A stretch of 64,000 bases of DNA from Haliotis rufescens. Its lineage: Eukaryota. The stretch covers positions 2,108,001-2,172,000 of the forward strand of contig NW_025963957.1 of assembly GCF_023055435.1 (NCBI RefSeq), given 5' to 3'. Below, one piece after another: positions 29,948-60,093 of this stretch. The number at the start of each line of letters is the position of its first letter. Position 1 is the stretch's first letter. Under the pieces are notes generated by a model. The model was not told the origin of the DNA. It did not search any database and saw nothing but the letters and a program-made list of their open reading frames with translations. Position numbers and translations under genes: made by a program.

Positions 29948-31306
29948 CTAACAGTAGGTATCTTTGAGGAGGAACAGCCTGACATAGGCATTCTGGTCGA
30001 CAGGACTGGCGGAACATGCCGAATTGCCACCGAAGAAAGACGAAAATATGATGCCGTCGATTTGAACATCAGCAGCATTCCTCATAGTGACCCCAGTGAC
30101 GTCAAACAGCTTACCGAGGCCGTTCGCCGAGAGCCTGATGTAGCCGTCAGCCTGCCCGGGGGTGTTCAGTCGGACGGTCATCATCAAGGTGTACCACGTA
30201 TTGTAGTCGAAATAGAAGCTGTTCCCCCCAGTCTTGTGTCCCCAGTCTTGATTACAATCGACTTCAGGTGAGCTACAGAATCCTTCCTGCTGGGTGACAT
30301 CGGGGGCAAAGAGACTGATCCCTCCCATGCCCGCTGTTCTCCAGATGAGGCGGGAGGTGAAGCAGTCCTTGCCGGGGTCACCCCCAGCCGTACAGTTGAC
30401 CCCACCTCCGTACAGACCCGGCAACTTTCCACCGTAGGCGAAGTCGAACCCTGTTGGAAACAGGACCTTGTATTGGAGGGTGACGCATTCCCTGGGTGCC
30501 ACTGGGCTGGCGTAGAACTGTAGGCCGCTGTTCGGACCTGTCATGGCGTATGAACCTTGGGAGAAGGAGATGTCGTAAACTTTGTTGTTTTTACCATCGG
30601 GGTTGGGAGATACGGAAACTGAATCGCCCCCGATGTAAGTGTCTTGGTGTATATTCCATCCGTTTCGCCACATGTTGTTAATCAGTGGGTTTCCTGAGCT
30701 CCAGAACTTTACTGCAGCTGGGGATGTATAAAATTTTGTTTGTTTTATGTATTAATCCATTAATGTTGTTTGAGAACATGACAACGCTAAATTATTTTGG
30801 TCAATATTTCAAGATGCAGTTGGCCAAGAAACCAGATGTTGTCAGGGATGATTTGAGGTTTTTGATCCAAACGAACTCTTGAAATCAAACTTTTAAAACG
30901 CATCACTTTAAAAAATACTTTGTAGCAAAATCATTCTAAAAATCAAAATAATTGTCTGGCTCAAATAAAAGTATAGTGAAGTAGGTAGAATCGAACACAT
31001 TGACTGTATTGACGAGGCTTGTAATCTGTTCTGACCGCATTTCATTTATGTATTTTCTGTACTGAATGAGTGAGTTTATTTTTTTGCCCCTATTAGAAAT
31101 TTTACAGAAATATCATTGTCGTTGGCACCAGAAAATGGCTTCACACATTGTACCCATGAGGGGAATAGAACCCGAGCCTTCAGTGTGACGAGCGAACGCT
31201 TTCATCGCTAGGCCACCGCACCGCCCCCGTGTGATGCGTGATGAGGTCACTGACCTGTGGTTGAGATACAGCACCCCAGCAGCGTCAGCGTCAGCATCAT
31301 CGTCAT
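29948..31306 (-). CDS. Secreted PL14 (alginate-lyase-like) protein, type A copy 1, 273 aa; coding exons 31306-31255 and 30717-29948
   Basis: PL14 motifs FDFxxGGKLPGLYGG, CFTSRLIWR, VRLNTPG.ADG, IDGIIFSSFFGG. The 52-nt exon encodes a signal peptide MTMMLTLTLLGCCISTT(A), with acceptor ttgtccag and donor G|gtcagt. It joins in phase 1 to acceptor atccccag|CT GCA GTA AAG; 52+770 nt = 274 codons. AATAAA at 29857-29862. Confidence 0.9.
31244..31256. promoter_or_regulatory. Perfect IR1 palindrome AGGTCA-c-TGACCT overlapping the exon-2 splice donor of type A genes
   Basis: Exact match here and at 41546-41558 and 50413-50425. Confidence 0.35.
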
Positions 31307-32018
31307 GGTATCTGGACAAGAGAAAAGGGGTTTTCATTCATGAGTTCAGCATTCAACACACAGAGACAACGATAGGACGTTGCACACTCAGTGTATATAC
31401 ATTGGGAACCTTGTCATCATAGGCGACTAAATGGATCGGGTGGTTAGGCTCGGTAACTTCGATGATGCATGTCATCGAATCCCAGTTGCATAGATCCATG
31501 CTCAGTCACTGGATTGCCTGGTCCACACTAGATAATTTATTGACCACCGCCATATAATGGAATATTGCTGAGTGCGGCGTTAAACAACAAACAAACACTC
31601 ATGCCGTTTTGAACAACGATTCGGTTATACCGCGATATGCCAGCTTAAATAGAAACTAGGATCTCACCAATGACAATACCACCAACTTTATTCATCTAAC
31701 GATCTAAATATAAATACTCGTATCTGTAGGCAAATGTCTCAGGAAGTGAATCATGTTTCATTTGTCGTTTGATTACGACGCATGCACTTTGCTGATTTAT
31801 TAGGAAGACACGATGGGACGCAGCTCTATTTAGCGACACGTTAATATTAAAATCGTTTACAGGGAGCAGCACAGTCATGAACGTATTTATACACCTAATG
31901 ACCTTCGTTTTGAATGCACGACATTTGCAACTGTGCTTCTCGAATAAACCATAGTGACTTCTATAACAACAATAAAAGTCGGATTCCGATCGGGCAAAGT
32001 GTCTCTATTTCTACCTGG

Positions 32019-32019
<1 letters not shown>

Positions 32020-32066
<47 letters not shown>
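32020..32066. repeat. (TAA)n microsatellite at the 5' junction of the R4/Dong-like element
   Basis: Direct. Confidence 0.95.
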
Positions 32067-32067
<1 letters not shown>

Positions 32068-32069
32068 TA

Positions 32070-33410: not shown

Positions 33411-33601
33411 AATTATATTAATCTATCATAGACATTTGGTTACGCATCACTATGAAATAGTGATGATACCAGGTGTTCACGAAAACATGAGCGTATCGTG
33501 CCCGACCGGGGGTACCTGTCACAAACACATGCAAAGGCTAAACTAAACTGTCATGTTAACAAGCAATACCTCACAGGAATAGTGACATTCACACAGCCTA
33601 C

Positions 33602-34282: not shown

Positions 34283-34539
34283 NNNNNNNNNNNNNNNNNN
34301 NNNNNNNNNNNNNNNNNNNNNNNNNNNNNNNNNNNNNNNNNNNNNNNNNNNNNNNNNNNNNNNNNNNNNNNNNNNNNNNNNNNNNNNNNNNNNNNNNNNN
34401 NNNNNNNNNNNNNNNNNNNNNNNNNNNNNNNNNNNNNNNNNNNNNNNNNNNNNNNNNNNNNNNNNNNNNNNNNNNNNNNNNNNNNNNNNNNNNNNNNNNN
34501 NNNNNNNNNNNNNNNNNNNNNNNNNNNNNNNNNNNNNNN
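34283..34539. other. Assembly gap inside a SINE B copy
   Basis: Run of N. Confidence 1.
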
Positions 34540-34590
34540 GTGCAATAATCTTGGACGCGACGTTAAATCAAATTTCACCTCACCACCTCA

Positions 34591-39840: not shown

Positions 39841-40268
39841 TGTCTTATCACGACGCACCAGCATTTTTGAAATCCAATGCTGACATGGCTTGTATACCTT
39901 TTCGGAGAAAACCATAAGCACGAGCATGGTGCTGACAAACCAAGGATCTTAATCGGAGAGAGCCTGTCAATCGACCCATCACCAGCAGCAAAGGGACATA
40001 ACCCTGAACAACAAATTCCGAGTGCATTGGGCCACCAGTGTGCCCAACACGAAGAGCCTACCAGATAGCTTAGTTATGGTGACTTCGGTGGCACCTCTTC
40101 TGAAGTCCAATGTGTTCTTCTAAAAATTGTGTGTCTCTCCATAATAACAACATTCATCACCACCATCGAACTTAGTTAACTTTATTCATGATAGTTAGAT
40201 ACAGAGTCCTAAAACTTGAGATTTTACATTACACAATAAATCAATCGGTCTGACGTATAATATAAATT

Positions 40269-41608
40269 TTAACAGTAGTTATCCTTGAGTTGGAAGCTCC
40301 TGAAAAAGGCATTCTGGTCGACAGGACTAGCGGAACATGCCGAATTGCCACCGAAGAAAGCCGAAAAGATGATGCCGTCGATTTGAACATCAGCGGCATT
40401 CCTCATAGTGACCCCAGTGACGTCAAACAGCTTACCAAGGCCGTTCGCCGAGAGCCTGATGTAGCCGTCAGCCTGCCCGGGGGTGTTCAGTCGGACGGTC
40501 ATCAACAGGGTGTACCACGTATTGTAGTCGAAATAGAAGCTGTTCCCCCCAGTCTTGTGTCCCCAGTCTTGATTACAATCGACTTCAGGTGAGCTACAGA
40601 ATCCTTCCTGCTGGGTGACATCGGGGGCAAAGAGACTGATCCCTCCCATGCCCGCTGTTCTCCAGATGAGGCGGGAGGTGAAGCAGTCCTTGCCGGGGTC
40701 ACCCCCAGCCGTACAGTTGACCCCACCTCCGTACAGCCCCGGCAACTTTCCACCGTAGGCGAAGTCGAACCCTGTTGGAAATAAGACCTTGTATTGGAGG
40801 GTGACACATTCCTTGGGTGCCACTGGGCTGGCGTAGAACTGTAGGCCGCTGTTCGGACCCGTCAAGGCGTATGAACCTTGGGAGAAGAAGATGTCGTGAA
40901 CTTTGTTGTTGCTACCATCGGGGTTCGGAGATACGGAAGCTGAATTGCCTCCGATGTATGTATCTTGGTGTATATTCCATCCGTTTCGCCACATGTTGTT
41001 ATTCTGCGGGTTGGCTGAGTTCCAGAACTTTACTGCAGCTGAGGATGTATAAATTATTATATTATTATTATATAAAGGATGTCTAATGTATTAATTCATA
41101 ACGTTCTTTGAGAATATGACCGCGTTGAATTTTTTAGGTCAGTATTCCAAGATGCAGTAGGCCCAGAAACCGGATAGGGATAATTTGAGGTTTTTGTCCT
41201 TATACTGAACTTTTAATAAGCATTACTTTTAAAGAATATTTCATTGCAAAATCATTCTAAAAACCAGAATAATTAACTGGCTCAAATAAAAATATAGTGA
41301 AGTAGGTCGAATCAAACACATTGACTGTATTGACGAGGGTTGTAATTTGTTTCATTCATGTATTTTCTGTACTGAATTAGTGAGTACAGATTTGCGCCCC
41401 GACTTGCTATTTTACAGAAATATGATTATCGTTGGCACCAGAAAATGGCTTCACACATGTGGGAATAGAACCCGAGCCTTCAGTGTGACGAGCGAATGCT
41501 TTAATCGCTAGGCCACCACACCGACCCTTTGTTTAATGCATGATGAGGTCACTGACCTGTGGAGGAGATACAGCATCCCAGCAGCAGCAGCGTCAGCATC
41601 ATCGTCAT
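40269..41608 (-). CDS. Secreted PL14-like protein, type A copy 2, 273 aa; coding exons 41608-41557 and 41038-40269
   Basis: Same motifs and exon sizes (52+770 nt) as copy 1. Signal peptide MTMMLTLLLLGCCISSTA, canonical GT/AG, AATAAA at 40181-40186. Confidence 0.9.
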
Positions 41609-42895
41609 GGTATCTGGCCAAGAGAGAAAACGGCTTTCATTCATGGGTTCAGCATCCTGCACATGAAAGCAACGATGAAACGCTCCTCACTCTGTATATT
41701 CTCTAGGAACCTTGCCACAGGCGACTAAATGTCAGGGGAGCTAGGGTCTTGCCATCAACCTTATCAAAATGCGTTTTGTTTGTCTGCCAACTCTGTTCAA
41801 AATTATACAGTCATTAATGATTATAGTGAAGAAATAAAGACAACTTCTCAGTTTGAGACATGGCACACATGATATCATCTAGCCCTAGGCTGGCAATGGG
41901 ATCCATGTAGTGGAGCAGGGCCCCTTCAGTGCGGAAACAATCTCCAAGTGACGCAGGTCGTAGACGTTTACCCATTGGTGACGCCCACGACCACGGGCAT
42001 GGTCGTGCCACGCGGAGGCACTAGTTAGAACGAATCTTGGATTCGATTCAAGACGAACGGAACCTAGCACGACTTTTTCTCGAAGATACAGGCGATGGAG
42101 CTGACCACAGCTTTACTTCCGGGTGAGCACTCAAGGACGTTTGGTCGTCACAGCATTTGTAGCCATTAACGTATTTATACACCTGATGACCTTCGGACAT
42201 TTACAACGATGCTTCACGAATACACCATAGTGACATTTATAACAACAACCGATGCCCGGCATCTCAGCAAAGTCTTTCCAACACGACCGCCTCCGTGGTC
42301 TAGTGGTAGAGCGTCCGCCCGGAGAGCGGAACGTCCGGGGTTCGTCCCCAGCCGCGTCATACGTTAAAAGATCATACTAGTTGTATCGTTCGGCATTGAG
42401 AGACTAAAACAAACTGGTCGGCTCGGAGTCCGTATACTGTGCCGGAGTGGGGTGTTCATGTTAAACTGCGGCATGGTATTTCAGTTGGCTAGCACTATAA
42501 ATCGACATCAGTCTGGACTAGAACAAGCAGCCACACACACGTGCATGCACGACGCTATATAAGTGCAATAATCTTGTACGCGGCGTTAAACCCTATTTCA
42601 CCTCACCTAACCTCACCTCACCTTTCAAACACCACATTGACTGTCTGTTATGTATATTCTTGAAATTAACGATAACCATAAACAATACCCTATGTTTCCA
42701 TAATCAAAAGAAATCCATTGTACGATTCCGACTATATCATACGCATATGTTTATGAATCACTATTAAATAGTGTCACCAGAGGTTCGCGAAATGGCGAGC
42801 ATACCCGGCCCACTGGTGGCACCCGTCACAAACACATGCAAAGGCATAAGCTAACCTGGCATGTTGACAAACAATGCAACATTCACACAGCCTAC

Positions 42896-42958
42896 CTTGT
42901 CTCGGTTGTCAGCAAGGGAGAACAGTGAAAACACAAGGCCACTTGAGGTGAATATATA
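42896..42958 (-). promoter_or_regulatory. Putative TATA + non-coding exon 1 of type A copy 2
   Basis: Homologous to 33602-33664: TATATATT then AAG|GTAGG donor. Confidence 0.55.
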
Positions 42959-45375
42959 CTGCCTATATTATCTATAGATCAAATTAACTGACGTTAACAC
43001 AGAAAATTACTTCCGTTAAGGCCTGAAGGTGATCATAGTGTGACATCCAGAAAAGGAGATTTGATTGTTACGTGTCAAAGTCAGGTCGCGTGTCTTAGTA
43101 AGCCCTTAGGAACATTCAATTTAGGCCTCTTTAAGCTCACCTGATCTGACCAATGTTATCTAAAATTTCGGTATTCCGATCTGATTTTAAACATGCCACT
43201 GAAGGCGGCTATATCGAAAAAATGTCATTTAAAACATAACTAAGTCATCATGCAGAAAATTTATGGTATGCTTGAAAACATATATGGTATATTTCTGTGG
43301 CGTAGATGTGCTTTGACCCTCACGGGGCCCTGTGTTGGCGATCGACTCAGTGGTCTAGTGGAAGAGCGTCCGCCAATGAGACGTTAAAATATGGTTCTTG
43401 TTGTTACCCTGTCTGGCGCTCGGCATTAAGGGGCTAAAACAAGGACTAGTCGGCTCGAAGTCAGAATACTGTGTGGGGTATTCATGTTAAACTGCGGCAT
43501 GGTATCTCAGTGGGCTCGCGCTATGAATCGGCAACTGTCCTGACTAATACAAGCAGCTAAACACACAAACACACATGTGCATGCACGTCGCTATATAAGT
43601 GCAACAATCTTGGACGCGACGTTAAACCCCATTTCACCTCACCTCACCCTGTGTTGGTGAAGCTGCAATTCCGTGTATTTGTGGCTCTGTTTATCTGTTT
43701 TTTACTGTCTCTCCCAATTGAAATGATGCTTCGGCGTTGATAAAGTTGCAATTCCGTGTATTTGATCCCAGCAATATTGTTCAAAACGTTCGCTGAATCC
43801 CCATTCAATATTAAACATGGCCACCAAGGCAGCCATTTTAAACATGTCATTTTCAATCACACAGACATTTCTTAATGTTCTGATGAAACTAGGATAGGAA
43901 TAACACGTGTTGCATTATGTTATGTGTTCTAATATTTGTCACAGCCTCAACATGTATTTATGTTCATCCCCATTTATTCAGGGGCATGGTTTGCCCTGTT
44001 GTCTAAGGCGCCGCAATTCGCTTTTCAGAGTTGCCTCTCTTGGAAATCTAATGATATGATCGTGGGTTCGAATCCAGATTCGACCCAATTATGTTTCTAG
44101 GTTGGTCAGTACCATACCGATGCTCGTGGATGATAAGAAACAAAGTAAAGATTCAAATTAGAGACGTCTTATGGGTATTGATGGTCGTGGAATAAAGTAA
44201 AATGAAATCACAGAAAAGGATCACAGAATTATTCATCAGACATGCCAGGAAGGCAAAACAAATACAGACATAAACTATTTTTATTTATGTTAATTATTAT
44301 ATTGAAGTCGTATCAATAGTACACTGCCGTCTAAGGCGCCGCGATTCGCTGTGCAGGGCACGCCATAAACCTATGATTGTGGGTTCGATTACTGGTTCGC
44401 CCCAATTATGTTTCTAGGTTTGTCAGCACCATTGCCGTGCTCGTGGGTTTCACCGAAGTGGTAAAGGTCTAAGACCTGCAACACATTAAGCTGAAACGCC
44501 GCGACATAACTGTAATACTGTTAAAAAGTGGCGTTAAACCCAACTCACTCACTCACTCACTTTTAAAGTAAACGCTTGGAAAGGATGGAGGATGACCGCA
44601 CAGTGCACGTTTAACAGCCTGGTGTTTATTTAGCCGTTTGGCATTTCATATGTGTGAACACTATTGGTATATTAACCTCTTAACAGCCACGACGTCCACA
44701 GTGTACATAACGTTATACTCTGTTATTGAAAATCGAAATTTAATCCTGTATTTCTGCCATGAGTAAGGACAGAGAAACGTATTAGGCCTAACTGTACAAG
44801 GCTTGAAGTTGACAGGTTCTACAACTGTCGTTGCATGGCGATTTTCAAATCAAAGCGCAATGGTTACCAAATCGGGAAGATTTAAATGACCACACAAAAT
44901 CAATGAATAATCAATAAAATATTTTCAAACACCCATTTCAGGTTTTCGATAAAGAACGGCAATACAAGATGTAAAATAACCAACAGGTTGTAAACTGCTT
45001 GTACACTTGCAGTAGTGTGCCTGTTGACTTCCTGTATACTGCCCGTAAACTGCCTATTGACTGCCAGTATACTGCCCGTAAACTGCCTGTAGACCGCCGG
45101 TAAACAGCCTATTGACTGTCAGTATACTGCCCGTAAACTGCCTATTGATTGCCTGTAGACCGCCGGTAAACCGCCTATTGGCTGCAGGTAGACTGACCGT
45201 AAACCGCCTATTGACTGCCTGTATACTGCCCGTAAACTGCCTATAGACAAGCTGCCCTTTTAAGTTATCCAGTCATGAAATGTTTTTAAAACCGTAGATT
45301 GCCTGTAGGTTAAATGTGATGCTGGAAACACTATGACAAAAAAACAAAAAACAATTCTGAACTCTTCTATTTATA

Positions 45376-46744: not shown

Positions 46745-47604
46745 TATATTTGGTATATTTGAGATGACAAGAACTAGTTAGTTAATTACAAATAAAAACG
46801 CGCCTGTAAAAAAAAGATGTTATTCAAAATAGCATAATGTTTGTTGTTTTTATCTTTATTTTACAATGTTTACATGCCAAGGGGATATAACTGAATTATA
46901 CTGTTGACTTCGGCGTTAAGTAACATACACTTACTCATTTGCATATGTAGCAGGACAAGTCGAATGGTCATGGTGACAAATGCACTAGAAACAGGAGATT
47001 GTTTAGAAACCACAGAAGCGTCTGTAAAATACACATATTGCATTTTATTTGTATGTCAGAACGTTATTTTTACAGACAAGTTACGCTGCAAGATTTGTAT
47101 TGATTTTAAAGCTGTTTGTGTACATCAGAATATATAAGTCCATTAATAATGCTTCAGATTCAGTTCACCAAGTGAATGTTCATAGCCATTACATTGTCTG
47201 GGTCTTCAAGGGTTTCGCTCAAAAGAAAGCCTTCCTTCACCCAGCAGTGAGTGGGTACCCGGTAGGATGAAATTGTAATATGACTAAACCTTGGTGTATA
47301 ACTCCCAATGGGAATGAGAGTGAAATTTGAGTGCACACTGATCCATCAACATCAAACAAAGTCACTTGCTAAGGGATACACAACATGTTGGGGAGCAGGG
47401 CGCCTGAAAAACTCTCTTGAGACAAGTTTCGAAATATGAATATGTAAAACAAAAACAGAAAGTGTGTTTCACTGTTTATTTAAATTCAAATAACATCTGG
47501 TATAGTGTGATTATGTTCACATGATGCCCATTTATTATATTTAAAATGACGATGATGAGGATGTGGAAACTTCGAAGTTGAGAGAAAACACAGTTGGGCA
47601 GGTT

Positions 47605-47972
47605 TTAGCAGACGTTGTCCTTGAGGGCGAAATACCGGAAGTAGACATGAGTATCAACAGGACTTCCGGAACATGACGATGTCCCGCCGAAATAATTGGA
47701 AAACAGAATGCCGTCGACTTTAACATCGGAAAACATATAATTTTTACCTCGCATTAAGGGACACATGATGGCCTCTGAACATTACATTCAGTGAAAAACA
47801 ATCAAGACCGGTTCCTTCCGGTCACATTTTGTAACAGAAATACATGAATGAGTGTCGTATATACTTAATACCTACATGGGCTTATATATCTACCTGTACG
47901 GGGGTCAGTTATCTTACCTGTGAAATGGCTGAGGGTGACAGTGGCCAGGAGCAGGTATCGGAGCTGAGACAT
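47605..47972 (-). pseudogene. Type-B PL14-like pseudogene with ~920-bp internal deletion
   Basis: Keeps the signal-peptide exon (47972-47918) and only the last ~40 codons (VDGILFSNYFGG...KDNVC*). The junction at ~47725-47727 (acATCgga) fuses sequence equivalent to 58927 and 59845 of the intact copy, removing the acceptor and most of the domain exon. Confidence 0.88.
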
Positions 47973-49223
47973 CGTCCTGTAACACTGACGTACCCCAAAC
48001 ATGCGGAACATTATCGGAGTGAAGAACACAACACAACACGTGAAGGACCTACCAAGGACGTGTCAGGAACATGGATATTACAGCTATATGGACATATGGA
48101 CAATAACGGACATAAAACACATAGACATTAAAAGAATAATACCTTTGTGACATAAACGAAGTGAGTATAGTTTTACGCCGCTTTTCCCAATATTCCAGCT
48201 ATATCACGGCGAGGGAAACCAGAAATGGGCTTCACACAATGTCCCCATGTGGGGAATCGAACTGAGTCTTCGGCGTACGAGCGAACGCATTAACCACTAG
48301 GCTACCCACCGCCCCCTCATATACGATGCATAAGACATTGAATATATAGGACAAATTAGAACCTTCAGTGTACTTCAGATACAAAACATTTACAAACGAG
48401 CGAAATATTTCAAGCACAAAATCGGAATAAGTGTTACTGTTATCGAAATATCACTCAATCATAATAGTTATGTTCACTTAGAGAATCGCCGTCATAGACG
48501 ATGACGGTTAGTTGGGCAACATGCGTTATTTAATAAAAAGTGACACTATTCGACTGTGGGTAACATACCTGTCCAACGCTGTTCCGTTGACGTGGAGTGA
48601 CGATTCTTCGGATGTGCTGTGCTTATAAACGGGTATTTCCTATCGTCGGATCATTTTGTTTGTGTTGATAGATAGGAGACGTGTACCATTTAATTCACAT
48701 TTAATTACTTTATCAACGAGTTTTATACCATTCATTATTTCCGCGTTCCCTCAGGTCACGGTGACCTAGCGAAAGACCACCTGCAGATAAATGTGTAGGC
48801 GCGATGATGTCACAAGTGTTCTCCACGTACATTGACACAGTCTCGGGTTGCTATAGCAAGAAAAAAACATAAGCACGAGCATGGTGCTGACAAACCAAGG
48901 ATCCTAATCGGAGAGAGCCTGTCAATCGACCCATCACCAGCAGCCAAGGGACATAACCCTGAACAACAAATTCCGAGTGCATTGGGCCACCAGTGTGCCC
49001 AACACGAAGAGCCTACCAGATAGCTTAGTTATGGTGACTTCGGTGGCAACTCTTCTGAAGACCAATGTGTTCTTCTCAAAATTGTGTATCTCTCCATAAT
49101 AACAACATTCATCACCACCATCGAACTTAGTTAACTTTATTCCTGATAGTTAAATACAGAGTCCTACAACTTGAGATTTTACATTACACAATAAATCAAT
49201 CGGTCTGACGTATAATATATATT

Positions 49224-50475
49224 TTAACAGTAGTTATCCTTGAGTTGGAAGCTCCTGAAAAAGGCATTCTGGTCGACAGGACTAGCGGAACATGCCGAAT
49301 TGCCACCGAAGAAAGCCGAAAAGATGATGCCGTCGATTTGAACATCAGCGGCATTCCTCATAGTGACCCCAGTGACGTCAAACAGCTTACCGAGGCCGTT
49401 CGCCGAGAGCCTGATGTAGCCGTCAGCCTGCCCGGGGGTGTTCAGTCGGACGGTCATCAACAAGGTGTACCACGTATTGTAGTCGAAATAGAAGCTGTTC
49501 CCCCCAGTCTTGTGTCCCCAGTCTTGATTACAATCGACATCAGGTGAGCTACAGAATCCTTCCTGCTGGGTGACATCGGGGGCAAAGAGACTGATCCCTC
49601 CCATGCCCGCTGTTCTCCAGATGAGGCGGGAGGTGAAGCAGTCCTTGCCGGGGTCACCTCCAGCCGTACAGTTGACCCCACCCCCGTACAGACCCGGCAA
49701 CTTTCCACCGTAGGCGAAGTCGAACCCTGTTGGAAACAGGACCTTGTATTGGAGGGCGACGCATTCCCTGGGTGCCACTGGGCTTGCGTAGAACTGTAGG
49801 CCGCTGTTCGGACCCGTCAAGGCGTATGCACCTTGGGAGAAGAAGATGTCGTGAACTTTGTTGTTGCTGCCATCGGGGTTGGGAGATACGGAAGCTGAAT
49901 TGCCTCCGATGTATGTATCTTGGTGTATATTCCATCCGTTTCGCCACATGTTGTTATTCTGCGGGTTGGCTGAGTTCCAGAACTTTACTGCAGCTGAGGA
50001 TGTATAAATTATTATATTATTATTATATAAAGGATGTCTAATGTATTAATTCATAACGGTTTTTGTCCTTAATGAACTTTTAATAAGCATTACTTTTAAA
50101 GAATATTTCATTGCAAAATCATTCTAAAAGCCAGAATAATTAACTGGCTCAAATAAAAATATAGTGAAGTAGGTCGAATCAAACACATTGACTGTATTGA
50201 CGAGGGTTGTAATTTATTTCATTCATGTATTTTCTGTACTGAATTAGTGAGTACAGATTTGCGCCCCGACTTGCAATTTTACAGAAATATGATTATCGTT
50301 GGCACCAGAAAATGGCTTCACACGTGTGGGAATAGAACCGGAGCCTTGAGTGTAACGAGCGAACGCTTTAGTCGCTAGGCCACCACACCGCCCCTTTGTG
50401 TAATGCATGATGAGGTCACTGACCTGTGGAGGAGATACAGCATCCCAGCAGCAGCAGCGTCAGCATCATCGTCAT
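49224..50475 (-). CDS. Secreted PL14-like protein, type A copy 3, 273 aa; coding exons 50475-50424 and 49993-49224
   Basis: Near-identical to copy 2, with intact frame and splice sites. AATAAA at 49136-49141. Confidence 0.9.
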
Positions 50476-51710
50476 GGTATCTGGACAAGAGATAAAACGG
50501 CTTTCATTCATGGGTTCAGCATCCTCCACATGAAAGCAACGATGAAACTCTGCTCACTCTGTATATTCTCTAGGAACCTTGTCATGGGCGACTTAATGTC
50601 AGGGAAGCTAGGGTCTTGCCATCAACCTTATCAAAATGCGTTTTGTTTGTCTGCCAACTCTGATTTTATTAGATATTTCAAAATTATACAGTCAATTATG
50701 ATTATAGTGAGAAATAAAGACAACTTCTCAGTTTGAGACATGGTAACATGATATCATCTTGCCCTAAACGGGCACTGGGGTCCATATCATGGAGCAGTGC
50801 CCCTTCAGTGCGGAAACAATCTCCAAGTGACGCAGGTCGTAGACGTTTACCTCTTTGGTGATGCCCGCGACCACGGGCATGGTCGTGCCACGCCGAGGCA
50901 CTAGTTAGAACGAATCTTGGATTCGATTCAAGACGAACGGAACCTAGCACGCCTTTTTCTCGAAGATACAGGCGATGTAGTTGACCATAGCTTTACTTCC
51001 GGGTAAATGCACGGATATTTACAACGATGCTTCTCGAATAACCATAGTGACATTCATAACAACAACTGATGCCTGGCATCTCAGCAAAGTCTTTCCAACA
51101 CGACCGCCTCCGTGGTCTAGTGGTAGTGCGTCCGCCAGGACCGGAGAGCGGAAGGTCCGGGGTTCGATCCCGGCCGCGTCATGCGTTAAAAGATTATACT
51201 AGTTGTTACCCTGCGCTCGGCATTGAGGAACTAAAACAAAGACTGGTCGGCTCGGAGTCAGTATACTGTGTCTGAGTGGGGTGTTCATGTTAAACTGCGG
51301 CATGGTATTTCAGTGGGCTAGCACTGTAAATCGACATCAGTCTGGACTAGAACAAGCAGCCACACACATGTGCGTGCACGACGCTATGTAAGTGCAATAC
51401 TCTTGTGCGCGGCGTTAAACCCTATTTCACCTCACCTCACCTTTCCAAAACCACATTAACTGTGACTATTATGTTAACAGAAACCATGCGCAATGTTTCC
51501 ATAATCAAATGTAACCCATTATACGATTCCGACTATATCATAAGCATATGTTTATGAATCACTATTAAATAGTGTTACCAGAGGTTCGCGAAATGGCGAG
51601 CATACCCGACCCACTGGTGGCACCCGTCACAAACACATGCAAAGGCATAATCTAACCTGGCATGTTGACAAACAATGCTGTACAGGAGTAGCGACATTCA
51701 CACAGCCTAC

Positions 51711-51772
51711 CTTGTCTCGGTTGTCAGCAAGGGAGAACAGTGAAAACACAAGGCCACTTGAAGTGATATATA
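51711..51772 (-). promoter_or_regulatory. Putative TATA + non-coding exon 1 of type A copy 3
   Basis: Homologous to 42896-42958. Confidence 0.55.
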
Positions 51773-53379
51773 CTGCCCATATTATCTATAGATCAAATTA
51801 ACTGACGTTAACACAGAAAATTACTTCCGTTATGGCCTGAAGGTGATCATAGTGTGACATCCAGAAAAGGAGATTTGGTTGTTATGTGTCAAATTCAGGT
51901 CGCGTGTCTTAGTAAGCCCTTAGGAACATTCAATTTAGGCCTCTTTAAGCTCACCTGATCTGACCAATGTTATCTAAAATTTCGGTATTCCGATCTGATT
52001 TTAAACATGCAACTGAAGGCGGCTATATCGAAAATGTCATTTAAAACATAACTAAGTCAGAAAATTTATGGTATGCTTGAAAACATATATGGTATTTTTC
52101 TGTGACGTAGATGTGCTTTGACCCTCACGGGGCCCTGTGTTGGTGATCGACTCAGTGGTCTAGTGGAAGAGCGTCCGCCAATGAGACGTTAAAAGATGGT
52201 TCTTGTTGTTACCCTGTCTGGCGCTCGTCATAAACGGGCTAAAACAAGGACTAGTCGGCTAGAAGTCAGTATACTGTGTGGGGTATTCATGTTAAACTGC
52301 GGCATGGTATCTCAGTGGGCTAGCGCTATGAATCGACAACAGTCCTGACTAGTACAAGCAGCCACACACAAACACACATGTGCATGCACGTCGCTATATA
52401 AGTGCAACAATCTTGGACGCGACGTTAAACCCCATTTCACCTGACCTCAACCTGTGTTGGTGAAGCTGCAATTCCGTGTATTTGTGGCTCTGTTTATCTG
52501 TTTTTTACTGTCTCTCCCAGTTGTAATGATGCTTCGGCGTTGATAAATATTGCTCAAAACGTTCGCTGAATCCCGATTCTATATTAAACATGGCCACCAA
52601 GGCAGTCATTTTAAACATGTCATTTCCCATCACACAGACATTGCTTAATGTTTTGATGAAACTGGGATATGAATAACAGGTTTTGGAGTTGGAGTTGCTG
52701 TGCAGAGTTCTGTCCTATGATTGTGGTTTCGATAACAGTTTCGCCCCGATTATGTTTCTAGGTTTGTCAGCACCATACCCGTGCCCGTGGGTTTCACCGA
52801 AGTTGTAAACGTCTGAGACCTGCATCACTTCAGGCTTTTCTCATACATTAAGCTGACACGCCATGATATAACTGTAATACTGTTAAAAGCGGCGTTAAAC
52901 CCAACTCACTCACTAACTTTTAAAGTAAACGCTTGGAAAGGATGGAGGATGACTTCACAGTGCACGTTTAACAGCCTGGTGTTTATTTAGCCGTTTGGCA
53001 TTTCATATGTGATGATATTGCATATCGAACACTATTGGCGCATTAACCTCTTGTCGCTTTCTACAGCCACGACGTCCTGAGTGTACATAACGTTATACTC
53101 TGTTATTGAAAATCGAAATCTAATCCTGTATTTCTGCCATGAGTAAGGACAGAGAAATGTATTAGGCCTAACTGTACAAGGCTTTAAGTTGACACGTTCT
53201 ACAACTGTTGTGCAACGATTTTCAAATCAAAGCGCAATGGTTACCAAATCAGGAAGATTTAAATGACCACACAAGACCCATGAATATTTAATAAAAGATT
53301 TTCAAACACCCACTTCAGGTGTTCGATAAAGAACGGCAATACAAGGGGTAAAATAAGCAACAGCTTGTGAACTGCTTGT

Positions 53380-56300
53380 ACACTGCCAGTAGTCTGCCTG
53401 TTGACTGCCTGTGTACTGTCCGTAAACTGCCTTTTGACTGCCCGTAAACCGCCTATTGACTGCCTGTAGACCGCCCGTAAACTGCCTATTGACTGCCTGT
53501 AGACCGCCCGGAAAACCGCCGATTGACTGCCAGTATACTGCCCGTAAACCGCCGATTGACTGCCAGTATACTGCCCGTAAACCACCTATTGACCGCCAGT
53601 AGACTGACTGTAAACTGCCTATTGACTGCAGGTAGACCGCCCGTAAACCGCCTATTGACTGTCAGTATACTGCCCGTAAACTGCCTATTGACTGCCTGTA
53701 GACTGACCGTAAACCACCTATTGACCGGTAGTAGACCGCCCGTAAACCGCCTATTGACTGCCAGTATACTGCCCGTAAACCGCCGATTGACTGCCTGTAG
53801 ACTGACCGTAAACCACCTATTGACCGGTAGTAGACCGCCCGTAAACCGCCTATTGATTGCCTGTAGACTGACCGTAAACTGCTTATTGACTGCAGGTAGA
53901 CCACCCGTAAACTGCCTACTGACTGCCTGTAGACCGCCCGTAAACCGCCGATTGACTGCCAGTATACTGCCCGTAAACTGCCTGTTGGCTGCAGGTAGAC
54001 TGACCTTTAACTGCCTATTGACTGCCTGTAGACCGCCCGTAAACCGCCTATTGACTGCCAGTATACTGCCCGTAAACCGCCTATTGACTGCCTGTATACT
54101 GCCCATAAACCTCCTCTTGACTGCCAGTATACTGCCCGTAAACTGCCTATTGACTGCCTGTATACTGCCCATAAACCGCCTCTTGACTGCCAGTATACTG
54201 CCCGTAAACTGCCTGTTGGCTGCAGGTAGACTGACCGTAAACCGCCTATTGACTGCCTGTAGACCGCCCGTAAACCGCCGATTGACTGCCAGTATACTGC
54301 CCGTAAACCGCCTATTGACTGCCTGTATACTGCCCATAAACCGCCTCTTGACTGCCAGTATACTGCCCGTAAACTGCCTGTTGGCTGCAGGTAGACTGAC
54401 CGTAAACCGCCTATTGACTGCCTGTAGACCGCCCGTAAACCGCCTATTGACTGCCAGTATACTGCCCGTAAACCGCCTATTGACTGCCTGTATACTGCCC
54501 ATAAACCGCCTCTTGACTGCCAGTATACTGCCCGTAAACTGCCTGTTGGCTGCAGGTAGACTGACCGTAAACCGCCTATTGACTGCCTGTAGACCGCCCG
54601 TAAACCGCCTATTGACTGCCTGTATACTGCCCGTAAACCTGCAGGTAGACCGCCCGTAAACCGCCTATTGACTGCCAGTATACTGCCCGTAAACTGCCTA
54701 TTGACTGCCTGTATACTGCCCATAAACCGCCTCTTGACTGCCTGTAGACCGCCCGTAAACCGCCTATTGACTGCCAGTATACTGCCCGTAAACCGCCTAT
54801 TGACTGCCTGTATACTGCCCATAAACCGCCTCTTGACTGCCAGTATACTGCCCGTAAACTGCCTGTTGGCTGCAGGTAGACTGACCGTAAACCGCCTATT
54901 GACTGCCTGTAGACCGCCCGTAAACCGCCTATTGACTGCCTGTATACTGCCCGTAAACCTGCAGGTAGACCGCCCGTAAACCGCCTATTGACTGCCAGTA
55001 TACTGCCCGTAAACTGCCTATTGACTGCCTGTATACTGCCCATAAACCGCCTCTTGACTGCCTGTAGACCGCCCGTAAACCGCCTATTGACTGCCAGTAT
55101 ACTGCCCGTAAACCGCCTATTGACTGCCTGTATACTGCCCATAAACCGCCTCTTGACTGCCAGTATACTGCCCGTAAACTGCCTGTTGGCTGCAGGTAGA
55201 CTGACCGTAAACTGCCTATTGACTGCCTGTAGACTGACCGTAAACCACCTATTGACCGGTAGTAGACCGCCCGTAAACCGCCTATTGACTGCCAGTATAC
55301 TGCCCGTAAACCGCCGATTGACTGCCTGTAGACTGACCGTAAACCACCTATTGACCGGTAGTAGACCGCCCGTAAACCGCCTATTGATTGCCTGTAGACT
55401 GACCGTAAACTGCTTATTGACTGCAGGTAGACCACCCGTAAACTGCCTACTGACTGCCTGTAGACCGCCCGTAAACCGCCGATTGACTGCCAGTATACTG
55501 CCCGTAAACTGCCTGTTGGCTGCAGGTAGACTGACCTTTAACTGCCTATTGACTGCCTGTAGACCGCCCGTAAACCGCCTATTGACTGCCAGTATACTGC
55601 CCGTAAACCGCCTATTGACTGCCTGTATACTGCCCATAAACCTCCTCTTGACTGCCAGTATACTGCCCGTAAACTGCCTATTGACTGCCTGTATACTGCC
55701 CATAAACCGCCTCTTGACTGCCAGTATACTGCCCGTAAACTGCCTGTTGGCTGCAGGTAGACTGACCGTAAACCGCCTATTGACTGCCTGTAGACCGCCC
55801 GTAAACCGCCGATTGACTGCCAGTATACTGCCCGTAAACCGCCTATTGACTGCCTGTATACTGCCCATAAACCGCCTCTTGACTGCCAGTATACTGCCCG
55901 TAAACTGCCTGTTGGCTGCAGGTAGACTGACCGTAAACCGCCTATTGACTGCCTGTAGACCGCCCGTAAACCGCCTATTGACTGCCAGTATACTGCCCGT
56001 ATATACTGCCCGTAAACTGCCTATTGACTGCCTGTATACTGCCCATAAACCGCCTCTTGACTGCCTGTAGACCGCCCGTAAACCGCCTATTGACTGCCAG
56101 TATACTGCCCGTAAACCGCCTATTGACTGCCTGTATACTGCCCATAAACCGCCTCTTGACTGCCAGTATACTGCCCGTAAACTGCCTGTTGGCTGCAGGT
56201 AGACTGACCGTAAACTGCCTATTGACTGCCCGTAAACTGCCTATTGACTGCCTTTAGACCGCCCGTAAACTGCCGACTGACTGCCAGTATACTGCCCTTA

Positions 56301-56400
56301 ATCAGCCTATTGACTGCTTGTAGAATGCGCATCTAGCCTCCTGCAGACTGCTTGTAGCTACGTATTGCTGTCTGGAGGCTATAGCTGCAGTAGCCGTAGG
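53380..56400. repeat. 33-bp (3x11-bp) minisatellite with higher-order blocks; short paralogous array at ~45000-45245
   Basis: Unit ttgactgcctg-tagaccgcccg-taaaccgccta. Re-duplicated blocks at offsets 320 bp (54635/54955) and 1531 bp (53691/55222). Confidence 0.97.
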
Positions 56401-56543
56401 CTGTCAGTGGATGCCCTTTAGCTGCCCTTTTAAGTTATCCAGTCACGAAATGTTTTTAAAACCGTAGATTGCCTATAGGTTAAATGTGATGCAGAAAACA
56501 CTATGACATAAAAAAATAATAATTCTGAACTCTTCTATTTATA

Positions 56544-57952
56544 TACTCTTCAAAAAAGGAAACGCAAAGCCAGATTTGTGTGAGGTAGGAAAATACATTT
56601 AAACGAGGAACCTTACAAGGTATTGAGCCAAAATGATGTGGAGAGAACACTTGGTGATTGTAATCATCTCAGTTATAGGTACATAGGATAGGTCCAAGGT
56701 GAAGGTCAGCTACCATCAATAACGCGTATGTCTCCCGTTGGAATCGATAGCGGCCAAACATGTCCTGCCCATGGAAGAGACGAGTATGCGAATCACATCC
56801 TTGAAAATGTTAGCCCAATCGGCCTGCAACGCAAAAGCCAACTGCTGCAACGTCTTGGGTTGTGGTTGACGTCGGCGTAGCCGTCTATCCAATTCAACCC
56901 ACAGGTGCTCTATCGAGTTCAAACCCGGGGATCTAGAGCGCCAGGGGAGAACTTCAACGTTGTTATTGTGTAGACAGACTCTTGTGATCCGTGCTGTATG
57001 CGGTCGAGCGTTGTCCTGCTGGAATACACCGTTGCCGTTGGTTGCAATTGGGAGGACATGTGGTAGAAGAATTTCGTTGATGTATCGTTGAGCCATAAGA
57101 TTGCCCTGGATATGGACCAAACCTGTTCTGCCATGATGAGAGATAGCCGCCCACATCATAACACTACCCCCACCAAACCTGTCCACTTCCTGTACGCGGT
57201 TTCCGGTCTCACCGACGTCTTCAATCCCCTCGACGGAGGAGAAACCTTGATTCGTCACTGAACCAGACATCTCTCCATCGCAGTTGAGGCCATACACCAT
57301 TGTTGTCGACTCAATATGACGCGTCGAACAGGATGTCCTGCTCGTAGACCTGCTGCTCTTAAACGGTTTTGTACAGTCTGGTCGGAGATTCTGCGCAGTC
57401 CGGGTATTTGGGATGCGGTTGAGGTGGCTGTGGTCGTCCTTTCACGTAGGTGGCGCAGTCGGATGTAGCGATCTAGGCGTGAATGGATACTCTTGGTCGT
57501 CCCGACCTTGGCCGATCACGTGTTGACCCATGCTGTTGAAACCGACCTTGTGATGTGTGCTGGGCGCTACATTGATAACCCTGGCTACAGCTGATTGGGA
57601 CGTTGTTTCTTTGCACTTCTGTAAATCTTGGCATGCTGTTGAACTGTCACTGTTCAATTGACGCTGCTGCCAGGCAAACAAAACCCCTGCACTTTAATAC
57701 CGTTTATACTGCTGCTGCACGTGCAGTACGTGCATCTCCGTGGCCCTTTTGTTAATGCACTGGGCGCGGGTTTTTTTCCGAATCGTACGTGTTTCCCGAC
57801 TAATGGTTTGCATGTCCTTGTAATCATTATGATCTTGGAAATTTGTCACTGAAATTATAACACATTAAACCTCTTCATTTTGCACCTCTTGGTCCAGTAA
57901 TTTTGCTTTTATTGCCAAAAATAGCCGTATTGCGTTTCTTTTTTTAAGAGTA
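56544..57952 (-). mobile_element. Decayed Tc1/mariner transposon, duplicate of 45376-46744
   Basis: Same TIRs and identical flanks, so it was copied with the segmental duplication. ORF 56716-57300 has QQDNARPH...SIEHLW. Confidence 0.9.
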
Positions 57953-58804
57953 TATATTTGGTATATTTGAGATGACAAGAACTAGTTCGTTAATTATAAA
58001 TAAAAACGGCGCCTGTAAAAAAATACATGTTATTCAAAATAGCATAATGTTTGTTGTTTTTATCTTTATTTTACACGGGGACATAACTGAATTCTACCGT
58101 TGACTGCGGCGTTAAGCAACACACACTTACTCATTTGCATATGTAGCGGGAAAAGCCGAATGGTCATGGTGACAAATGCACAAGAAACAGGAGATTGTTT
58201 AGACACCACAGAAGCGTCTGTAAAATACACATATTGCATTTTATTTGTATGCCAGAACGATATATTTCACAGACAAGTCACGTTGCAAGCTTTTTATTGA
58301 TTTTAACGGTGTTTGCCGTGTATATCAGATCATATAAGTCCATTGATAATGCTTCAGATTCAGTTCACCAAGTGAATGTTCATAGCCATTACATTGTCTG
58401 GGTCTTCAAGGGTTTCGGTCGAAAGAAAGTCTTCCTTTACCCAGCAGTGAGTGGGTACCCGGTAGGATGAAATTGTAATATGACTAAACCTTGTTATATA
58501 CTCCCAATGGGAATGAGAGTGAAATTTGAGTGCACACTGATCCATCAACATCAAACAAAGTCACTTGCTAAGGGATACACAACATGTTGGGGAACTGGGC
58601 GCCTAAAATAATCTCTTGAGACAAGTTTCGAAATATGAATATGTAAAACAAAAACAGAAAGTGTGTTTCATTGTTTATTTAAATTCAAATAACATCTGGT
58701 ATACTTTGATTATGTTCACATGATGCCCATTTGTTATAATTTATAATGACGATGATGAGGATGTGGAAACTTCGAAGTTGAGAGAAAACACAATTGGGCA
58801 GGTT

Positions 58805-60093
58805 TTAACAGACGTTGTCCTTGAGGGCGAAATACCGGAAGTAGACATGAGTATCAACAGGACTTCCGGAACATGACGATGTCCCGCCGAAATAATTGGA
58901 AAACAGAATGCCGTCGACTTTTACATCCGAGGATTCTCTGATTACAACGTTACTGACGTCGTACACTTTACCGACGCCCCCAACAACGATTCGAACGTAG
59001 CCATCTGCCTGGCCGGGTGTGTTAAGGCGAACAGTTTGCTGGATTGTGTACCAGGTCCCGGTCTGGAACTGGAAACTTCCGCTGCCCAGTCGGTGCCCCC
59101 AAGCATCATTACACTCCACCCCTTCAGTGGTACAGAACTCGGGTGTCTGCTGAGATGTGGTGAAGAGTGCCACTCCAACCATGCCTCCTGTTCTCCAGAT
59201 GAAGCGGGATGTGAAACAGTCCTTGCCTGGGTCACCTCCAGCCGTACAGTTGACCCCGCCACCGTACAGACCAGGCAACTTTCCACCGTAGGCGAAGTCG
59301 AAGTTGTCATCGAACCACACTTTGTAGGAGAGTGTCAGGCACTCCCTGGGCTCTAGAGGAGTGGAGTAGAACTCAGCTCCACTGAAGAGATCGGTGAGGC
59401 CGTAGGATCCCTGGGAGAGAGAGATGGCGCTGACTTGGTAGTTACTGCCATCGGGGTTTGGTTCAGCAGACACCGACTCCTGACCCCTGTATGTGGAGGT
59501 ATCCAGGTTCCAGTTCCCGCGCCATATTGTGTTGCGTCTTGGGTTCTTAGAGTTCCAGAGTTTAATCCCATCTAGTCAGAATATAGTTGATATAACAATC
59601 GTAGGTAATATGCCATTAGTATGTTGTAATTAAGGGAAATCAAAGCATAATAATTTGTGTGTGTAAAAATTTAGTCCGAGCTGGAGGGAGGAAAACATAA
59701 AGTTTGTTTAAATATAATAATTAATTCATAAACGTGCTGTGAAGTGTCATGTATATAGTTTAAATCATTGTTTTGCTTTATATAAATGGTTTCAAATTCA
59801 ATGTTCAAATTACTTTAGCGCCACAAATACCCAAAATACTCAGAATCGGAAAACATATAACTTTTACCTCGCATTAAGGGACACATAATGGCCTCTGAAC
59901 ATTACATTCAGTGAAACACAATCAAGACCGGTTCCTTCCGGTCACATTTTGTAACAGAAATACATGAATGAGTGTCGTATATACTTAATACCTACATGGG
60001 CTTATACTGTCTACCTGTACGGGGGTCAGTTATCTTACCTGTGAAATGGCTGAGGGTGACAGTGGCCAGGAGCAGGTATCGGATCTGAGACAT
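58805..60093 (-). CDS. Secreted PL14-like protein, divergent type B, 273 aa; coding exons 60093-60039 and 59571-58805
   Basis: The 55-nt exon encodes MSQIRYLLLATVTLSHFT(D), with acceptor gttacag and donor G|gtaaga. It joins in phase 1 to acceptor ctgactag|AT GGG ATT AAA CTC TGG; 55+767 nt = 274 codons. PL14 motifs GGKLPGLYGG, CFTSRFIWR, VDGILFSNYFGG. AATAAA at 58674-58679. Confidence 0.88.

What the first reader, a model, noticed from the sequence alone, without database searches (positions are those of the whole stretch)
29948..60093. Tandem cluster of secreted PL14 alginate-lyase homologues that appear to lack the catalytic tyrosines: candidate pseudo-enzyme or repurposed subfamily
Seen: four intact 273-aa secreted genes with clear PL14 motifs. 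Known (recalled): characterised PL14 lyases (abalone HdAly, Aplysia AkAly30, chlorovirus vAL-1) use the GGKLPG Lys, the SxRxMWR Arg and a YxY pair shortly after WR (HdAly WRADGDGEVYGY), with one Tyr proposed as acid/base. Here the Lys and Arg are kept, but the gap-free equivalent is WRTAGMGGISLF (type A) or WRTGGMVGVALF (type B), i.e. Y->S/A and Y->F. Other positions also differ in both types: DFRRGGK->DFAYGGK, CSGGR->CTAGG, GYSMGRG->GHKTGGN/GHRLGSG, FGGHDSTWA->FGGNSACSA/FGGTSSCSG. Inference: these are not decaying genes but a lineage that has given up classical beta-elimination of alginate. It could be a glycan-binding lectin-like or accessory protein, a mucus or shell-matrix component, or an enzyme with new chemistry or substrate.
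Basis: partly seen in the sequence, partly recalled or inferred. Interest (0 to 1): 0.88.

Follow-up and report, generated by a model that had tools for sequence, protein, structure and literature searches.

The report
Abalone lyase-like genes lacking tyrosines
Red abalone carries a tandem array of intact, secreted, selectively maintained copies of an alginate-lyase-fold protein that have lost the tyrosine pair kept by almost all other family members, so they probably no longer cut alginate in the usual way; what they do instead was not tested.

Summary
The window (Haliotis rufescens, from matches to RefSeq models) holds four intact two-exon, 273-aa genes with a predicted signal peptide on the minus strand. 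Each matches Pfam PL14 at about 1e-53. The AlphaFold model (pLDDT 92) superposes on Aplysia AkAly30 with TM 0.89.

All copies keep the GGK lysine, the Arg of the SxR motif and the WR motif. They replace the E-x-Y-x-Y motif by G-x-S/A-x-F. That motif is 90/98/99% conserved in 172 other PL14 domains from molluscs, fungi and bacteria.

- There are 15 hits in the assembly, at least 9 on this contig.
- A tenth, internally deleted type-B relic lies at 47.6-48.0 kb.
- I found the clade only in Haliotis (four species).
- It sits on the longest internal branch of the mollusc PL14 tree.

Purifying selection is clear, with dN/dS of 0.1-0.57. Type B is 90% identical between H. rufescens and H. asinina.

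The assembly gap is intergenic. It touches no gene model, but the adjacency of gene 1 to genes 2-4 rests on scaffolding across it.

The pseudo-enzyme reading is plausible but unproven. Reviews say the PL14 mechanism is unresolved, and the related PL36 enzyme uses lysine alone. No paper was found on this clade.

The parts
29948..31306 (-). Gene 1, type A (exon 1 31306-31255, intron, exon 2 30717-29948 including the stop). It encodes 273 aa and corresponds to XP_046365474.2. Key codons in exon-2 numbering: Y94 30434-30436, K97 30425-30427, R122 30350-30352, G132 30320-30322, S134 30314-30316, F136 30308-30310.
40269..41608 (-). Gene 2, type A (exon 1 41608-41557, exon 2 41038-40269). It encodes 273 aa and corresponds to XP_048258483.1.
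49224..50475 (-). Gene 3, type A (exon 1 50475-50424, exon 2 49993-49224). It encodes 273 aa and corresponds to XP_046365473.2 (isoform X1 is XP_046365472.2).
58805..60093 (-). Gene 4, type B (exon 1 60093-60039, exon 2 59571-58805). It encodes 273 aa and corresponds to XP_046365402.2. Its motif is GVALF.
47608..47972 (-). Broken type-B copy. Exon 1 (47972-47918) and the first ~195 nt of the intron are intact. An internal deletion of about 920 bp then joins the intron to the last 123 nt of exon 2 (47730-47608).
39905..58927 (.). Two copies of a duplication unit of about 8.95 kb (39905-48859 and 48860-58927, 91-97% identical). Each originally carried one type-A and one type-B gene.
34283..34539 (.). 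Assembly gap. It is intergenic and outside every gene model. It was not filled or inferred.
30350..30448 (-). Codons for the 33-aa block from the FDFAYGGK motif to the CFTSR motif (Lys97, the Cys108-Cys118 loop, Thr120, Arg122). The block is identical between types A and B. The type-B equivalent lies at about 59205-59303.

Best explanation
These genes are a tandemly amplified paralogue family of the molluscan PL14 polysaccharide lyases, found here only in Haliotis. It has two types, A and B, and each encodes a 273-aa protein with a predicted signal peptide.

Shown:
- The proteins keep the PL14 beta-jelly-roll fold.
- They keep the cleft lysine (K97), the arginine (R122), the W125-R126 motif and the disulfide-bridged loop next to the lysine.
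- They have replaced the family-wide Glu-x-Tyr-x-Tyr strand by Gly-x-Ser/Ala-x-Phe, and the Ser and Arg of the SLGRG loop by other residues.
- They have turned acidic: pI about 5, against 7.1-9.4 for this genome's canonical copies.
- They are under purifying selection. It is strongest on the lysine-loop-arginine segment.

Inferred:
- They no longer carry out the tyrosine-assisted beta-elimination of alginate proposed for AkAly30.
- They act instead as secreted, non-lytic carbohydrate-binding proteins (pseudo-lyases) that still use the conserved pocket.
- Their ligand is probably no longer long polyanionic alginate.
- They arose by duplication of a canonical Haliotis PL14 gene of the L002/L003 type. 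A burst of change followed, and then an A/B split that predates the H. asinina - H. rufescens divergence.
For: Family and fold:
- PF21294 matches at about 1e-53.
- AF2 model with pLDDT 92.3 and pTM 0.91.
- Foldseek TM 0.89 to 5gmt, 0.79-0.80 to vAL-1 and 0.72 to PL36 Aly36B.

Motif loss:
- All 15 divergent copies in the genome have S/A-L-F, while all 8 canonical copies have Y-A/G-Y.
- In 172 non-divergent PL14 domains Glu is 90%, Tyr1 98% and Tyr2 99% conserved. The Ser and Arg of the SLGRG loop are 90% and 91% conserved. All five are changed in the clade, while K, R, W and R are kept.
- The 22 best of the 150 listed representative hits, checked by motif, keep E-x-Y-x-Y, and the best single-domain hit outside Haliotis (a chiton protein, 176 bits) keeps it too.

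Selection:
- Pairwise dN/dS is 0.10-0.57 among recent copies and 0.20-0.25 between A and B.
- In the 33-aa block there are 5-7 synonymous and 0-1 non-synonymous differences.
- The block is nearly invariant in four species.
- Type B is 90% identical between H. rufescens and H. asinina, against 78% for the canonical L002-type enzyme.

Charge shift: pI 4.9-5.2 and net charge -4 to -6, against pI 7.1-9.4 and net charge 0 to +12.

Origin:
- The same phase-1 intron lies before the x-L/F-W motif in canonical and divergent genes.
- The Cys77 plus C-terminal Cys pair is shared only with L002/L003-type copies (2% elsewhere).
- The clade has 100/100 support on the longest internal branch (1.26) and lies outside the gastropod alginate-lyase clade (99/98). 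The ML tree joins it to the L002 type.

Mechanism (recalled, primary paper not held): the AkAly30 structure paper places Tyr140 next to C5 of the +1 mannuronate.
Against:
- The review PMC13709232 states that the PL14 mechanism is unresolved, that Lys and Ser are the residues shown essential in vAL-1, and that PL36 Aly36B uses one Lys as base and acid. The Lys is kept and Ser to Thr is conservative, so residual or altered lyase activity is possible.
- The strongest constraint falls on the very segment that would matter for catalysis as well as for binding.
- The clade gained residues that could serve in catalysis: Tyr94 (His in two H. cracherodii copies) next to the Lys, and an invariant extra Cys234.
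- The low synonymous divergence of the 33-aa block (dS 0.24-0.37, against more than 1.8 elsewhere) shows that part of its identity comes from an old gene-conversion event and not from selection alone.
Confidence: 0.5

Rival explanations
1. They are still polysaccharide lyases. They use a lysine-centred mechanism (as reported for PL36 Aly36B) or relocated acid/base residues (Tyr94/His94 or Cys234). Their substrate or pH optimum is changed, for example another uronate polymer such as cellouronate/glucuronan or ulvan.
For: - The review reports Lys as sole base and acid in Aly36B, and Lys plus Ser as the essential residues in vAL-1.
- Lys97, Thr120 (for Ser), Arg122 and the subsite -1 loop with its disulfide are kept, and they are the most constrained part of the protein.
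- A scallop PL14 is named a cellouronate lyase, so mollusc PL14 enzymes are not limited to alginate.
- The clade gained Tyr/His94 and an invariant Cys234.
Against: - Tyr1 and Tyr2 are 98-99% conserved across fungal, bacterial and animal PL14, which suggests they are needed for activity.
- Aly36B Tyr185 was mutated together with Lys143 to trap substrate (PDB title), so the equivalent Tyr matters there too.
- Five conserved polar cleft residues are lost at once.
- The proteins are acidic, which is unusual for enzymes that bind polyanions.
Confidence: 0.3
2. They have a role unrelated to the old cleft. Examples are a structural or matrix component of mucus, shell or egg coat, or a covalently linked partner protein, using the odd seventh cysteine for intermolecular disulfides.
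For: - The mature protein has seven cysteines. Cys234 is unique to the clade and invariant.
- pI is acidic.
- Copy number is high through tandem amplification.
- An N-glycosylation sequon (N107-C-T) lies on the cleft loop.
Against: The most constrained segment is the cleft lysine-loop-arginine block, which is hard to explain if the pocket were unused. No proteome or literature link to shell or mucus was found.
Confidence: 0.15
3. They are recently inactivated, decaying lyase genes (pseudogenes in the making).
For: One type-B copy in the window is broken by a deletion of about 920 bp. Four type-B copies carry Asp at the otherwise invariant first Gly of the FFGG motif.
Against: - All 15 other copies are open.
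- The clade predates the H. asinina split and is kept in four species.
- dN/dS is well below 1.
- Type B is 90% identical across that split.
Confidence: 0.03

Closest known systems
Molluscan PL14 alginate lyases (Aplysia AkAly30, PDB 5GMT; abalone HdAly/HdAlex type; Littorina LbAly)
   Same: - The same Pfam family.
- The same fold (TM 0.89).
- The same two-exon structure, with a phase-1 intron after the predicted signal peptide.
- The same GGKLPG lysine, SxR arginine, WR motif and disulfide-bridged loop beside subsite -1.
   Different: - The Glu-x-Tyr-x-Tyr strand and the SLGRG Ser and Arg are replaced.
- Met becomes Ile before the WR motif.
- pI is about 5 instead of 7-9.
- There is an extra invariant Cys234.
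- The clade lies outside the gastropod alginate-lyase clade on a very long stem.
Canonical Haliotis PL14 copies of the L002/L003 type (G000 contig C1; orthologues in H. cracherodii and H. asinina)
   Same: - They are the nearest relatives by score (185-198 bits).
- They share the rare Cys77 plus C-terminal Cys pair and the PR-x-C-L/V-T-L motif.
- The ML tree joins them to the divergent clade, with weak support (49/69).
   Different: The L002/L003 copies keep V-V-Y-A-Y and a basic pI of 8.6-9.4.
Chlorovirus vAL-1 (PL14, glucuronan/alginate lyase) and PL36 Aly36B
   Same: They share the beta-jelly roll and the GGK lysine and arginine. Aly36B is reported to use the lysine alone as base and acid.
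   Different: Both keep a Y-I-Y motif on the neighbouring strand, which the abalone clade lacks.
Catalytically inactive glycan-binding relatives of glycan-degrading enzymes: GH18 chi-lectins, invertebrate GH16-derived beta-glucan recognition proteins, and the Rv0315 pseudo-glucanase (an analogy from general knowledge; Rv0315 appears)
   Same: An enzyme fold and binding groove are kept, catalytic residues are replaced, the proteins are secreted, and the genes are under purifying selection.
   Different: These belong to different folds or families. No polysaccharide-lyase example turned up in the papers searched here, and binding is not shown for the abalone proteins.

Membership tests
CAZy PL14 / Pfam PF21294 (Polysacc_lyase_14) | Sequence match above the curated Pfam threshold | tested here: met
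   181.5, 183.3, 178.7 and 180.1 bits for genes 1-4, against a cut-off of 27, covering 4-215 of 215 profile positions.
CAZy PL14 / Pfam PF21294 (Polysacc_lyase_14) | Beta-jelly-roll fold superposable on solved PL14 structures | tested here: met
   AF2 pLDDT 92.3. Foldseek hit to 5gmt at E 2e-25 and TM 0.89, and to 3a0n/3gne at TM 0.79-0.80.
CAZy PL14 / Pfam PF21294 (Polysacc_lyase_14) | Cleft lysine of GGKLPG and arginine of S-x-R (100% conserved in 172 domains) | tested here: met
   K97 and R122 are present in all 19 divergent sequences. The Ser of S-x-R is Thr.
CAZy PL14 / Pfam PF21294 (Polysacc_lyase_14) | Glu-x-Tyr-x-Tyr strand (90/98/99% conserved; Tyr pair named as catalytic for AkAly30, recalled) | tested here: not met
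   The clade has G-x-S/A-x-F in all copies. Only one H. asinina type-B protein keeps the second Tyr.
CAZy PL14 / Pfam PF21294 (Polysacc_lyase_14) | Beta-elimination activity on alginate or glucuronan | not testable with these tools
   This needs recombinant protein and an A235 assay.
Pseudo-enzyme / enzyme-derived lectin | Residues needed for catalysis are lost while the gene stays under purifying selection | tested here: inconclusive
   The loss of conserved residues and dN/dS below 1 are shown. That the lost residues are indispensable is not settled in the literature read.
Pseudo-enzyme / enzyme-derived lectin | Ligand binding without turnover | not testable with these tools
   This needs glycan arrays, ITC or affinity gels.

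The most novel reading that the evidence does not exclude
The clade is a working enzyme that has rebuilt its active site. Lys97 would act alone, or with the clade-specific Tyr/His94 or the invariant free Cys234, in place of the lost tyrosine pair. This would give an acidic PL14-fold enzyme with new chemistry or a non-alginate substrate in the abalone gut.
Probability: 0.15. Interest if true: 0.85.

Novelty: new variant of a known kind. Interest (0 to 1): 0.58.

Why it matters
About two thirds of the PL14 hits in this abalone genome (15 of 23) belong to this clade. Counts of 'alginate lyase genes' taken from Pfam or dbCAN hits would therefore overstate the animal's alginolytic repertoire.

If the proteins are non-lytic binders, I know of no earlier example of a polysaccharide lyase turned into a lectin-like protein in an animal. 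That would parallel the chi-lectins and the beta-glucan recognition proteins.

If they are still active, they are a natural experiment on the unresolved PL14 mechanism: which of Lys, Ser/Thr, Arg and the Tyr pair is really needed. Either outcome can be tested directly with two recombinant proteins.

Tried and rejected
Tools that gave nothing:
I therefore had no coding DNA from H. asinina or H. cracherodii and could not measure cross-species dN/dS. I used within-genome paralogues and protein identity instead.
- The primary AkAly30 and vAL-1 papers were not held. Statements about Tyr140, Tyr142 and Lys99 rest on my recall plus reviews.
- Literature searches for the LOC ids, for abalone proteomes and for shell matrix with alginate lyase found nothing on this clade. 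One search was uninformative.
- The structure tools return no coordinates. Whether Tyr94 or Cys234 reaches the old Tyr position was therefore not tested.

Readings considered and rejected:
- Horizontal transfer from fungi. The first word-based search listed Mortierellomycota as the best hits outside Haliotis. Against this, the genome's own canonical copies score higher, the intron position is shared, and the tree puts the clade among molluscs.
- 'The identical 33-aa block is pure selection'. Its synonymous divergence is 5-8 times lower than in the rest of the gene, so an old conversion tract is also involved.

Exons were searched by reference, and each was matched separately to the RefSeq models.

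Full report
**What is there**

The window is G000:C179:2108001-2172000 of a 1.33-Gb mollusc assembly. Exact matches of the exon translations to RefSeq proteins identify it as Haliotis rufescens.

Four genes lie on the minus strand between 29948 and 60093. Each has three parts:
- a short first exon (52 nt in type A, 55 nt in type B) that encodes a hydrophobic N-terminus, which I read as a signal peptide by inspection since no predictor was run;
- a GT-AG phase-1 intron of about 470-540 nt;
- one large exon of 767-770 nt.

They correspond to XP_046365474.2, XP_048258483.1, XP_046365473.2 and XP_046365402.2, all named 'uncharacterized protein'. All searches used exon 2 by reference (for example window:29951-30715:-), and each exon was matched separately to the RefSeq models.

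**The assembly gap**

The gap at 34283-34539 lies in intergenic DNA. It is 2.98 kb upstream of the gene-1 start codon and 5.7 kb downstream of the gene-2 stop. tblastn finds no PL14 homology next to it. It affects no reading frame. Only the adjacency of gene 1 to genes 2-4 rests on scaffolding across it. I did not try to infer its content.

**Family and fold**

- All four exon-2 products match Pfam PF21294 (Polysaccharide lyase 14) at about 1e-53 over the whole profile.
- phmmer against PDB sequences finds Aplysia AkAly30 (5gmt, 1.9e-31) and chlorovirus vAL-1 (3a0n, 3e-8).
- An AlphaFold2 model of type A, built on a 76-sequence alignment, has pLDDT 92.3 and pTM 0.91.
- Foldseek places the model on 5gmt with TM 0.89, on vAL-1 with TM 0.79-0.80 and on PL36 Aly36B with TM 0.72.

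**The missing tyrosines**

The HMMER alignments pair AkAly30 E-L-Y-A-Y-I-P and vAL-1 D-Y-I-Y-P-P with G-I-S-L-F-A-P in type A and G-V-A-L-F-T-T in type B. In exon-2 numbering for type A, the changed residues are G132, S134 and F136. The residues kept are K97 (GGKLPG), R122, W125 and R126. The Ser of S-x-R is T120.

This is not a quirk of two reference enzymes. In 172 other PL14 domains collected from two database searches (molluscs, a chiton, an annelid, fungi, bacteria), the conservation is as follows:

| Position | Conservation in 172 other PL14 domains | State in the abalone clade |
|---|---|---|
| Glu of E-x-Y-x-Y | 90% | Gly |
| First Tyr | 98% | Ser (A) or Ala (B) |
| Second Tyr | 99% | Phe |
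| Ser of the SLGRG loop | 90% | Lys or Arg |
| Arg of the SLGRG loop | 91% | Gly or Ser (Lys in one sequence) |
| Met before the WR motif | 97% | Ile |

The genome itself gives the cleanest contrast.

**Extent of the family**

- The array does not stop at the window edge. Contig C179 has nine intact copies between 2.138 and 2.201 Mb: three of type A and six of type B.
- Two small contigs, C521 and C548, carry three type-B copies each. These are identical or nearly identical to each other and to C179 copies, so they are probably alternative-haplotype or redundant assemblies.
- Inside the window, a self-comparison shows a duplication unit of about 8.95 kb at 91-97% identity that originally carried one A and one B gene.
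- In the unit between genes 2 and 3, the B gene is broken. Its exon 1 (47972-47918) and the start of its intron are intact. A deletion of about 920 bp then joins the intron to the last 123 nt of exon 2 (47730-47608).
- Homologues with the same substitutions are annotated in H. cracherodii, H. rubra and H. asinina.
- In a search of 1.84 billion cluster representatives, the only clade member among the 150 best hits is a Haliotis protein. The next-best single-domain hit (a chiton protein, 176 bits) keeps E-x-Y-x-Y, as do the other 21 hits I checked by motif.

**Origin**

- Canonical and divergent genes share the phase-1 intron just before the conserved x-L/F-W motif. The clade is therefore a duplicate of a molluscan gene and not a separate acquisition.
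- The fungal hits that topped the first word-based search score below the genome's own canonical copies.
- In a maximum-likelihood tree with named molluscs, the clade has 100/100 support and sits on the longest internal branch, 1.26 substitutions per site. It lies outside the well-supported gastropod alginate-lyase clade (99/98). The best tree joins it, weakly (49/69), to the canonical L002/L003-type copies.
- That pairing is backed by a rare shared character. Cys77 and a C-terminal Cys are present in both groups, while a Cys at the Cys77 position occurs in only 2% of other sequences.
- Types A and B each include an H. asinina sequence, so the A/B split predates that species divergence.

**Selection**

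- All 15 copies are open.
- Nei-Gojobori dN/dS is 0.10-0.42 among type-A copies and 0.15-0.57 among type-B copies. Between A and B it is 0.20-0.25, although dS is saturated there.
- Canonical paralogues give 0.08-0.25, with 0.73 for the youngest pair.
- At the protein level, type B is 90% identical between H. rufescens and H. asinina, type A is 74% and the canonical L002-type enzyme is 78%.

**The identical 33-aa block**

The block runs from the FDFAYGGK motif to the CFTSR motif. It holds K97, the Cys108-Cys118 loop, T120 and R122.

It carries 5-7 synonymous and 0-1 non-synonymous differences between A and B. Its dS (0.24-0.37) is far below that of the rest of the gene (more than 1.8). I draw two conclusions:
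- An old gene-conversion tract is the best explanation for the low dS.
- Since that event, selection on the block has been very strong, because neutral change would have produced roughly 20 amino-acid differences.

The block is also almost invariant in the other three species. According to a review, the equivalent loop and disulfide in AkAly30 shape subsite -1.

**Other clade-specific features**

- The domains are acidic: pI 4.9-5.2 and net charge -4 to -6. Canonical copies have pI 7.1-9.4 and net charge 0 to +12.
- There is a seventh, unpaired cysteine, Cys234. It is invariant in the clade and absent from all 172 other domains.
- The residue three positions before the lysine is usually Lys or Arg in the family. 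In the clade it is Tyr94, or His in two H. cracherodii copies.
- An N-x-T sequon (N107-C-T) lies on the cleft loop.
- Four type-B copies have Asp at the first Gly of the FFGG motif, a position that is Gly in every other domain sampled.

**Interpretation**

The descriptive part of the finding is solid. The functional inference needs care, for these reasons:
- From memory, the AkAly30 structure paper names Lys99, Tyr140 and Tyr142 as catalytic and places Tyr140 near C5. I could not read it.
- A 2026 review states that Lys197 and Ser219 are the residues shown essential in vAL-1, that the PL14 mechanism remains to be elucidated, and that PL36 Aly36B uses a single lysine as both base and acid.
- The PDB holds an Aly36B K143A/Y185A substrate complex. 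Its Y-I-Y motif probably matches the PL14 pair. The tyrosine therefore matters there too.

My weights for the readings are:

| Reading | Weight |
|---|---|
| Non-lytic, pocket-using binding protein | about 0.5 |
| Still-active enzyme with a lysine-centred or rebuilt site and a changed substrate | about 0.3 |
| Role unrelated to the cleft | about 0.15 |
| Decay | about 0.03 |

The acidic charge argues that long polyanionic alginate is no longer the ligand, whichever reading holds.

**Limits**

- Expression could not be tested.
- Orthologue coding sequences could not be fetched.
- No coordinates were available for a residue-level superposition.
- No paper on this clade was found in the library.

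Noticed in passing
window 47608-47972 (-): A type-B gene copy is broken by an internal deletion of about 920 bp. Its exon 1 and the start of its intron are intact and are joined directly to the last 123 nt of exon 2.
   Followed up: yes
window 36568-37158 (-) and 56716-57300 (-): Two ORFs of 196 and 194 aa match the DDE_3 transposase domain (PF13358). They are probably Tc1/mariner-like element remnants between the PL14 genes.
   Followed up: partly
window 38272-39716, 53371-56357, 15786-18483 and 6051-6852: There are large minisatellite arrays with periods of 27, 33 (or 11/22), 18 and 29 nt. They produce the long repetitive ORFs in the ORF list. The 16-18 kb array is very G-rich (GC skew 0.85).
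   Followed up: no
G000:C179:2174370-2200621, and contigs C521 and C548: Five further intact type-B genes lie just beyond the window end, in alternating orientation. Two small contigs carry identical or near-identical triplets of type-B genes and are probably redundant haplotype assemblies.
   Followed up: partly
L002 and L003 (G000:C1:16.50-16.52 Mb): These two canonical PL14 paralogues keep the tyrosines and are the closest relatives of the divergent clade. The young pair has a high dN/dS of 0.73.
   Followed up: partly
window 29206-29336 and 15179-15310: There are two more assembly gaps. The first lies about 610 bp downstream of the gene-1 stop codon, beyond the AATAAA signal at about 29865.
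   Followed up: no
protein P0311: A scallop (Mizuhopecten yessoensis) PL14 protein is named a cellouronate lyase by its source. Mollusc PL14 substrates are therefore not limited to alginate.
   Followed up: no
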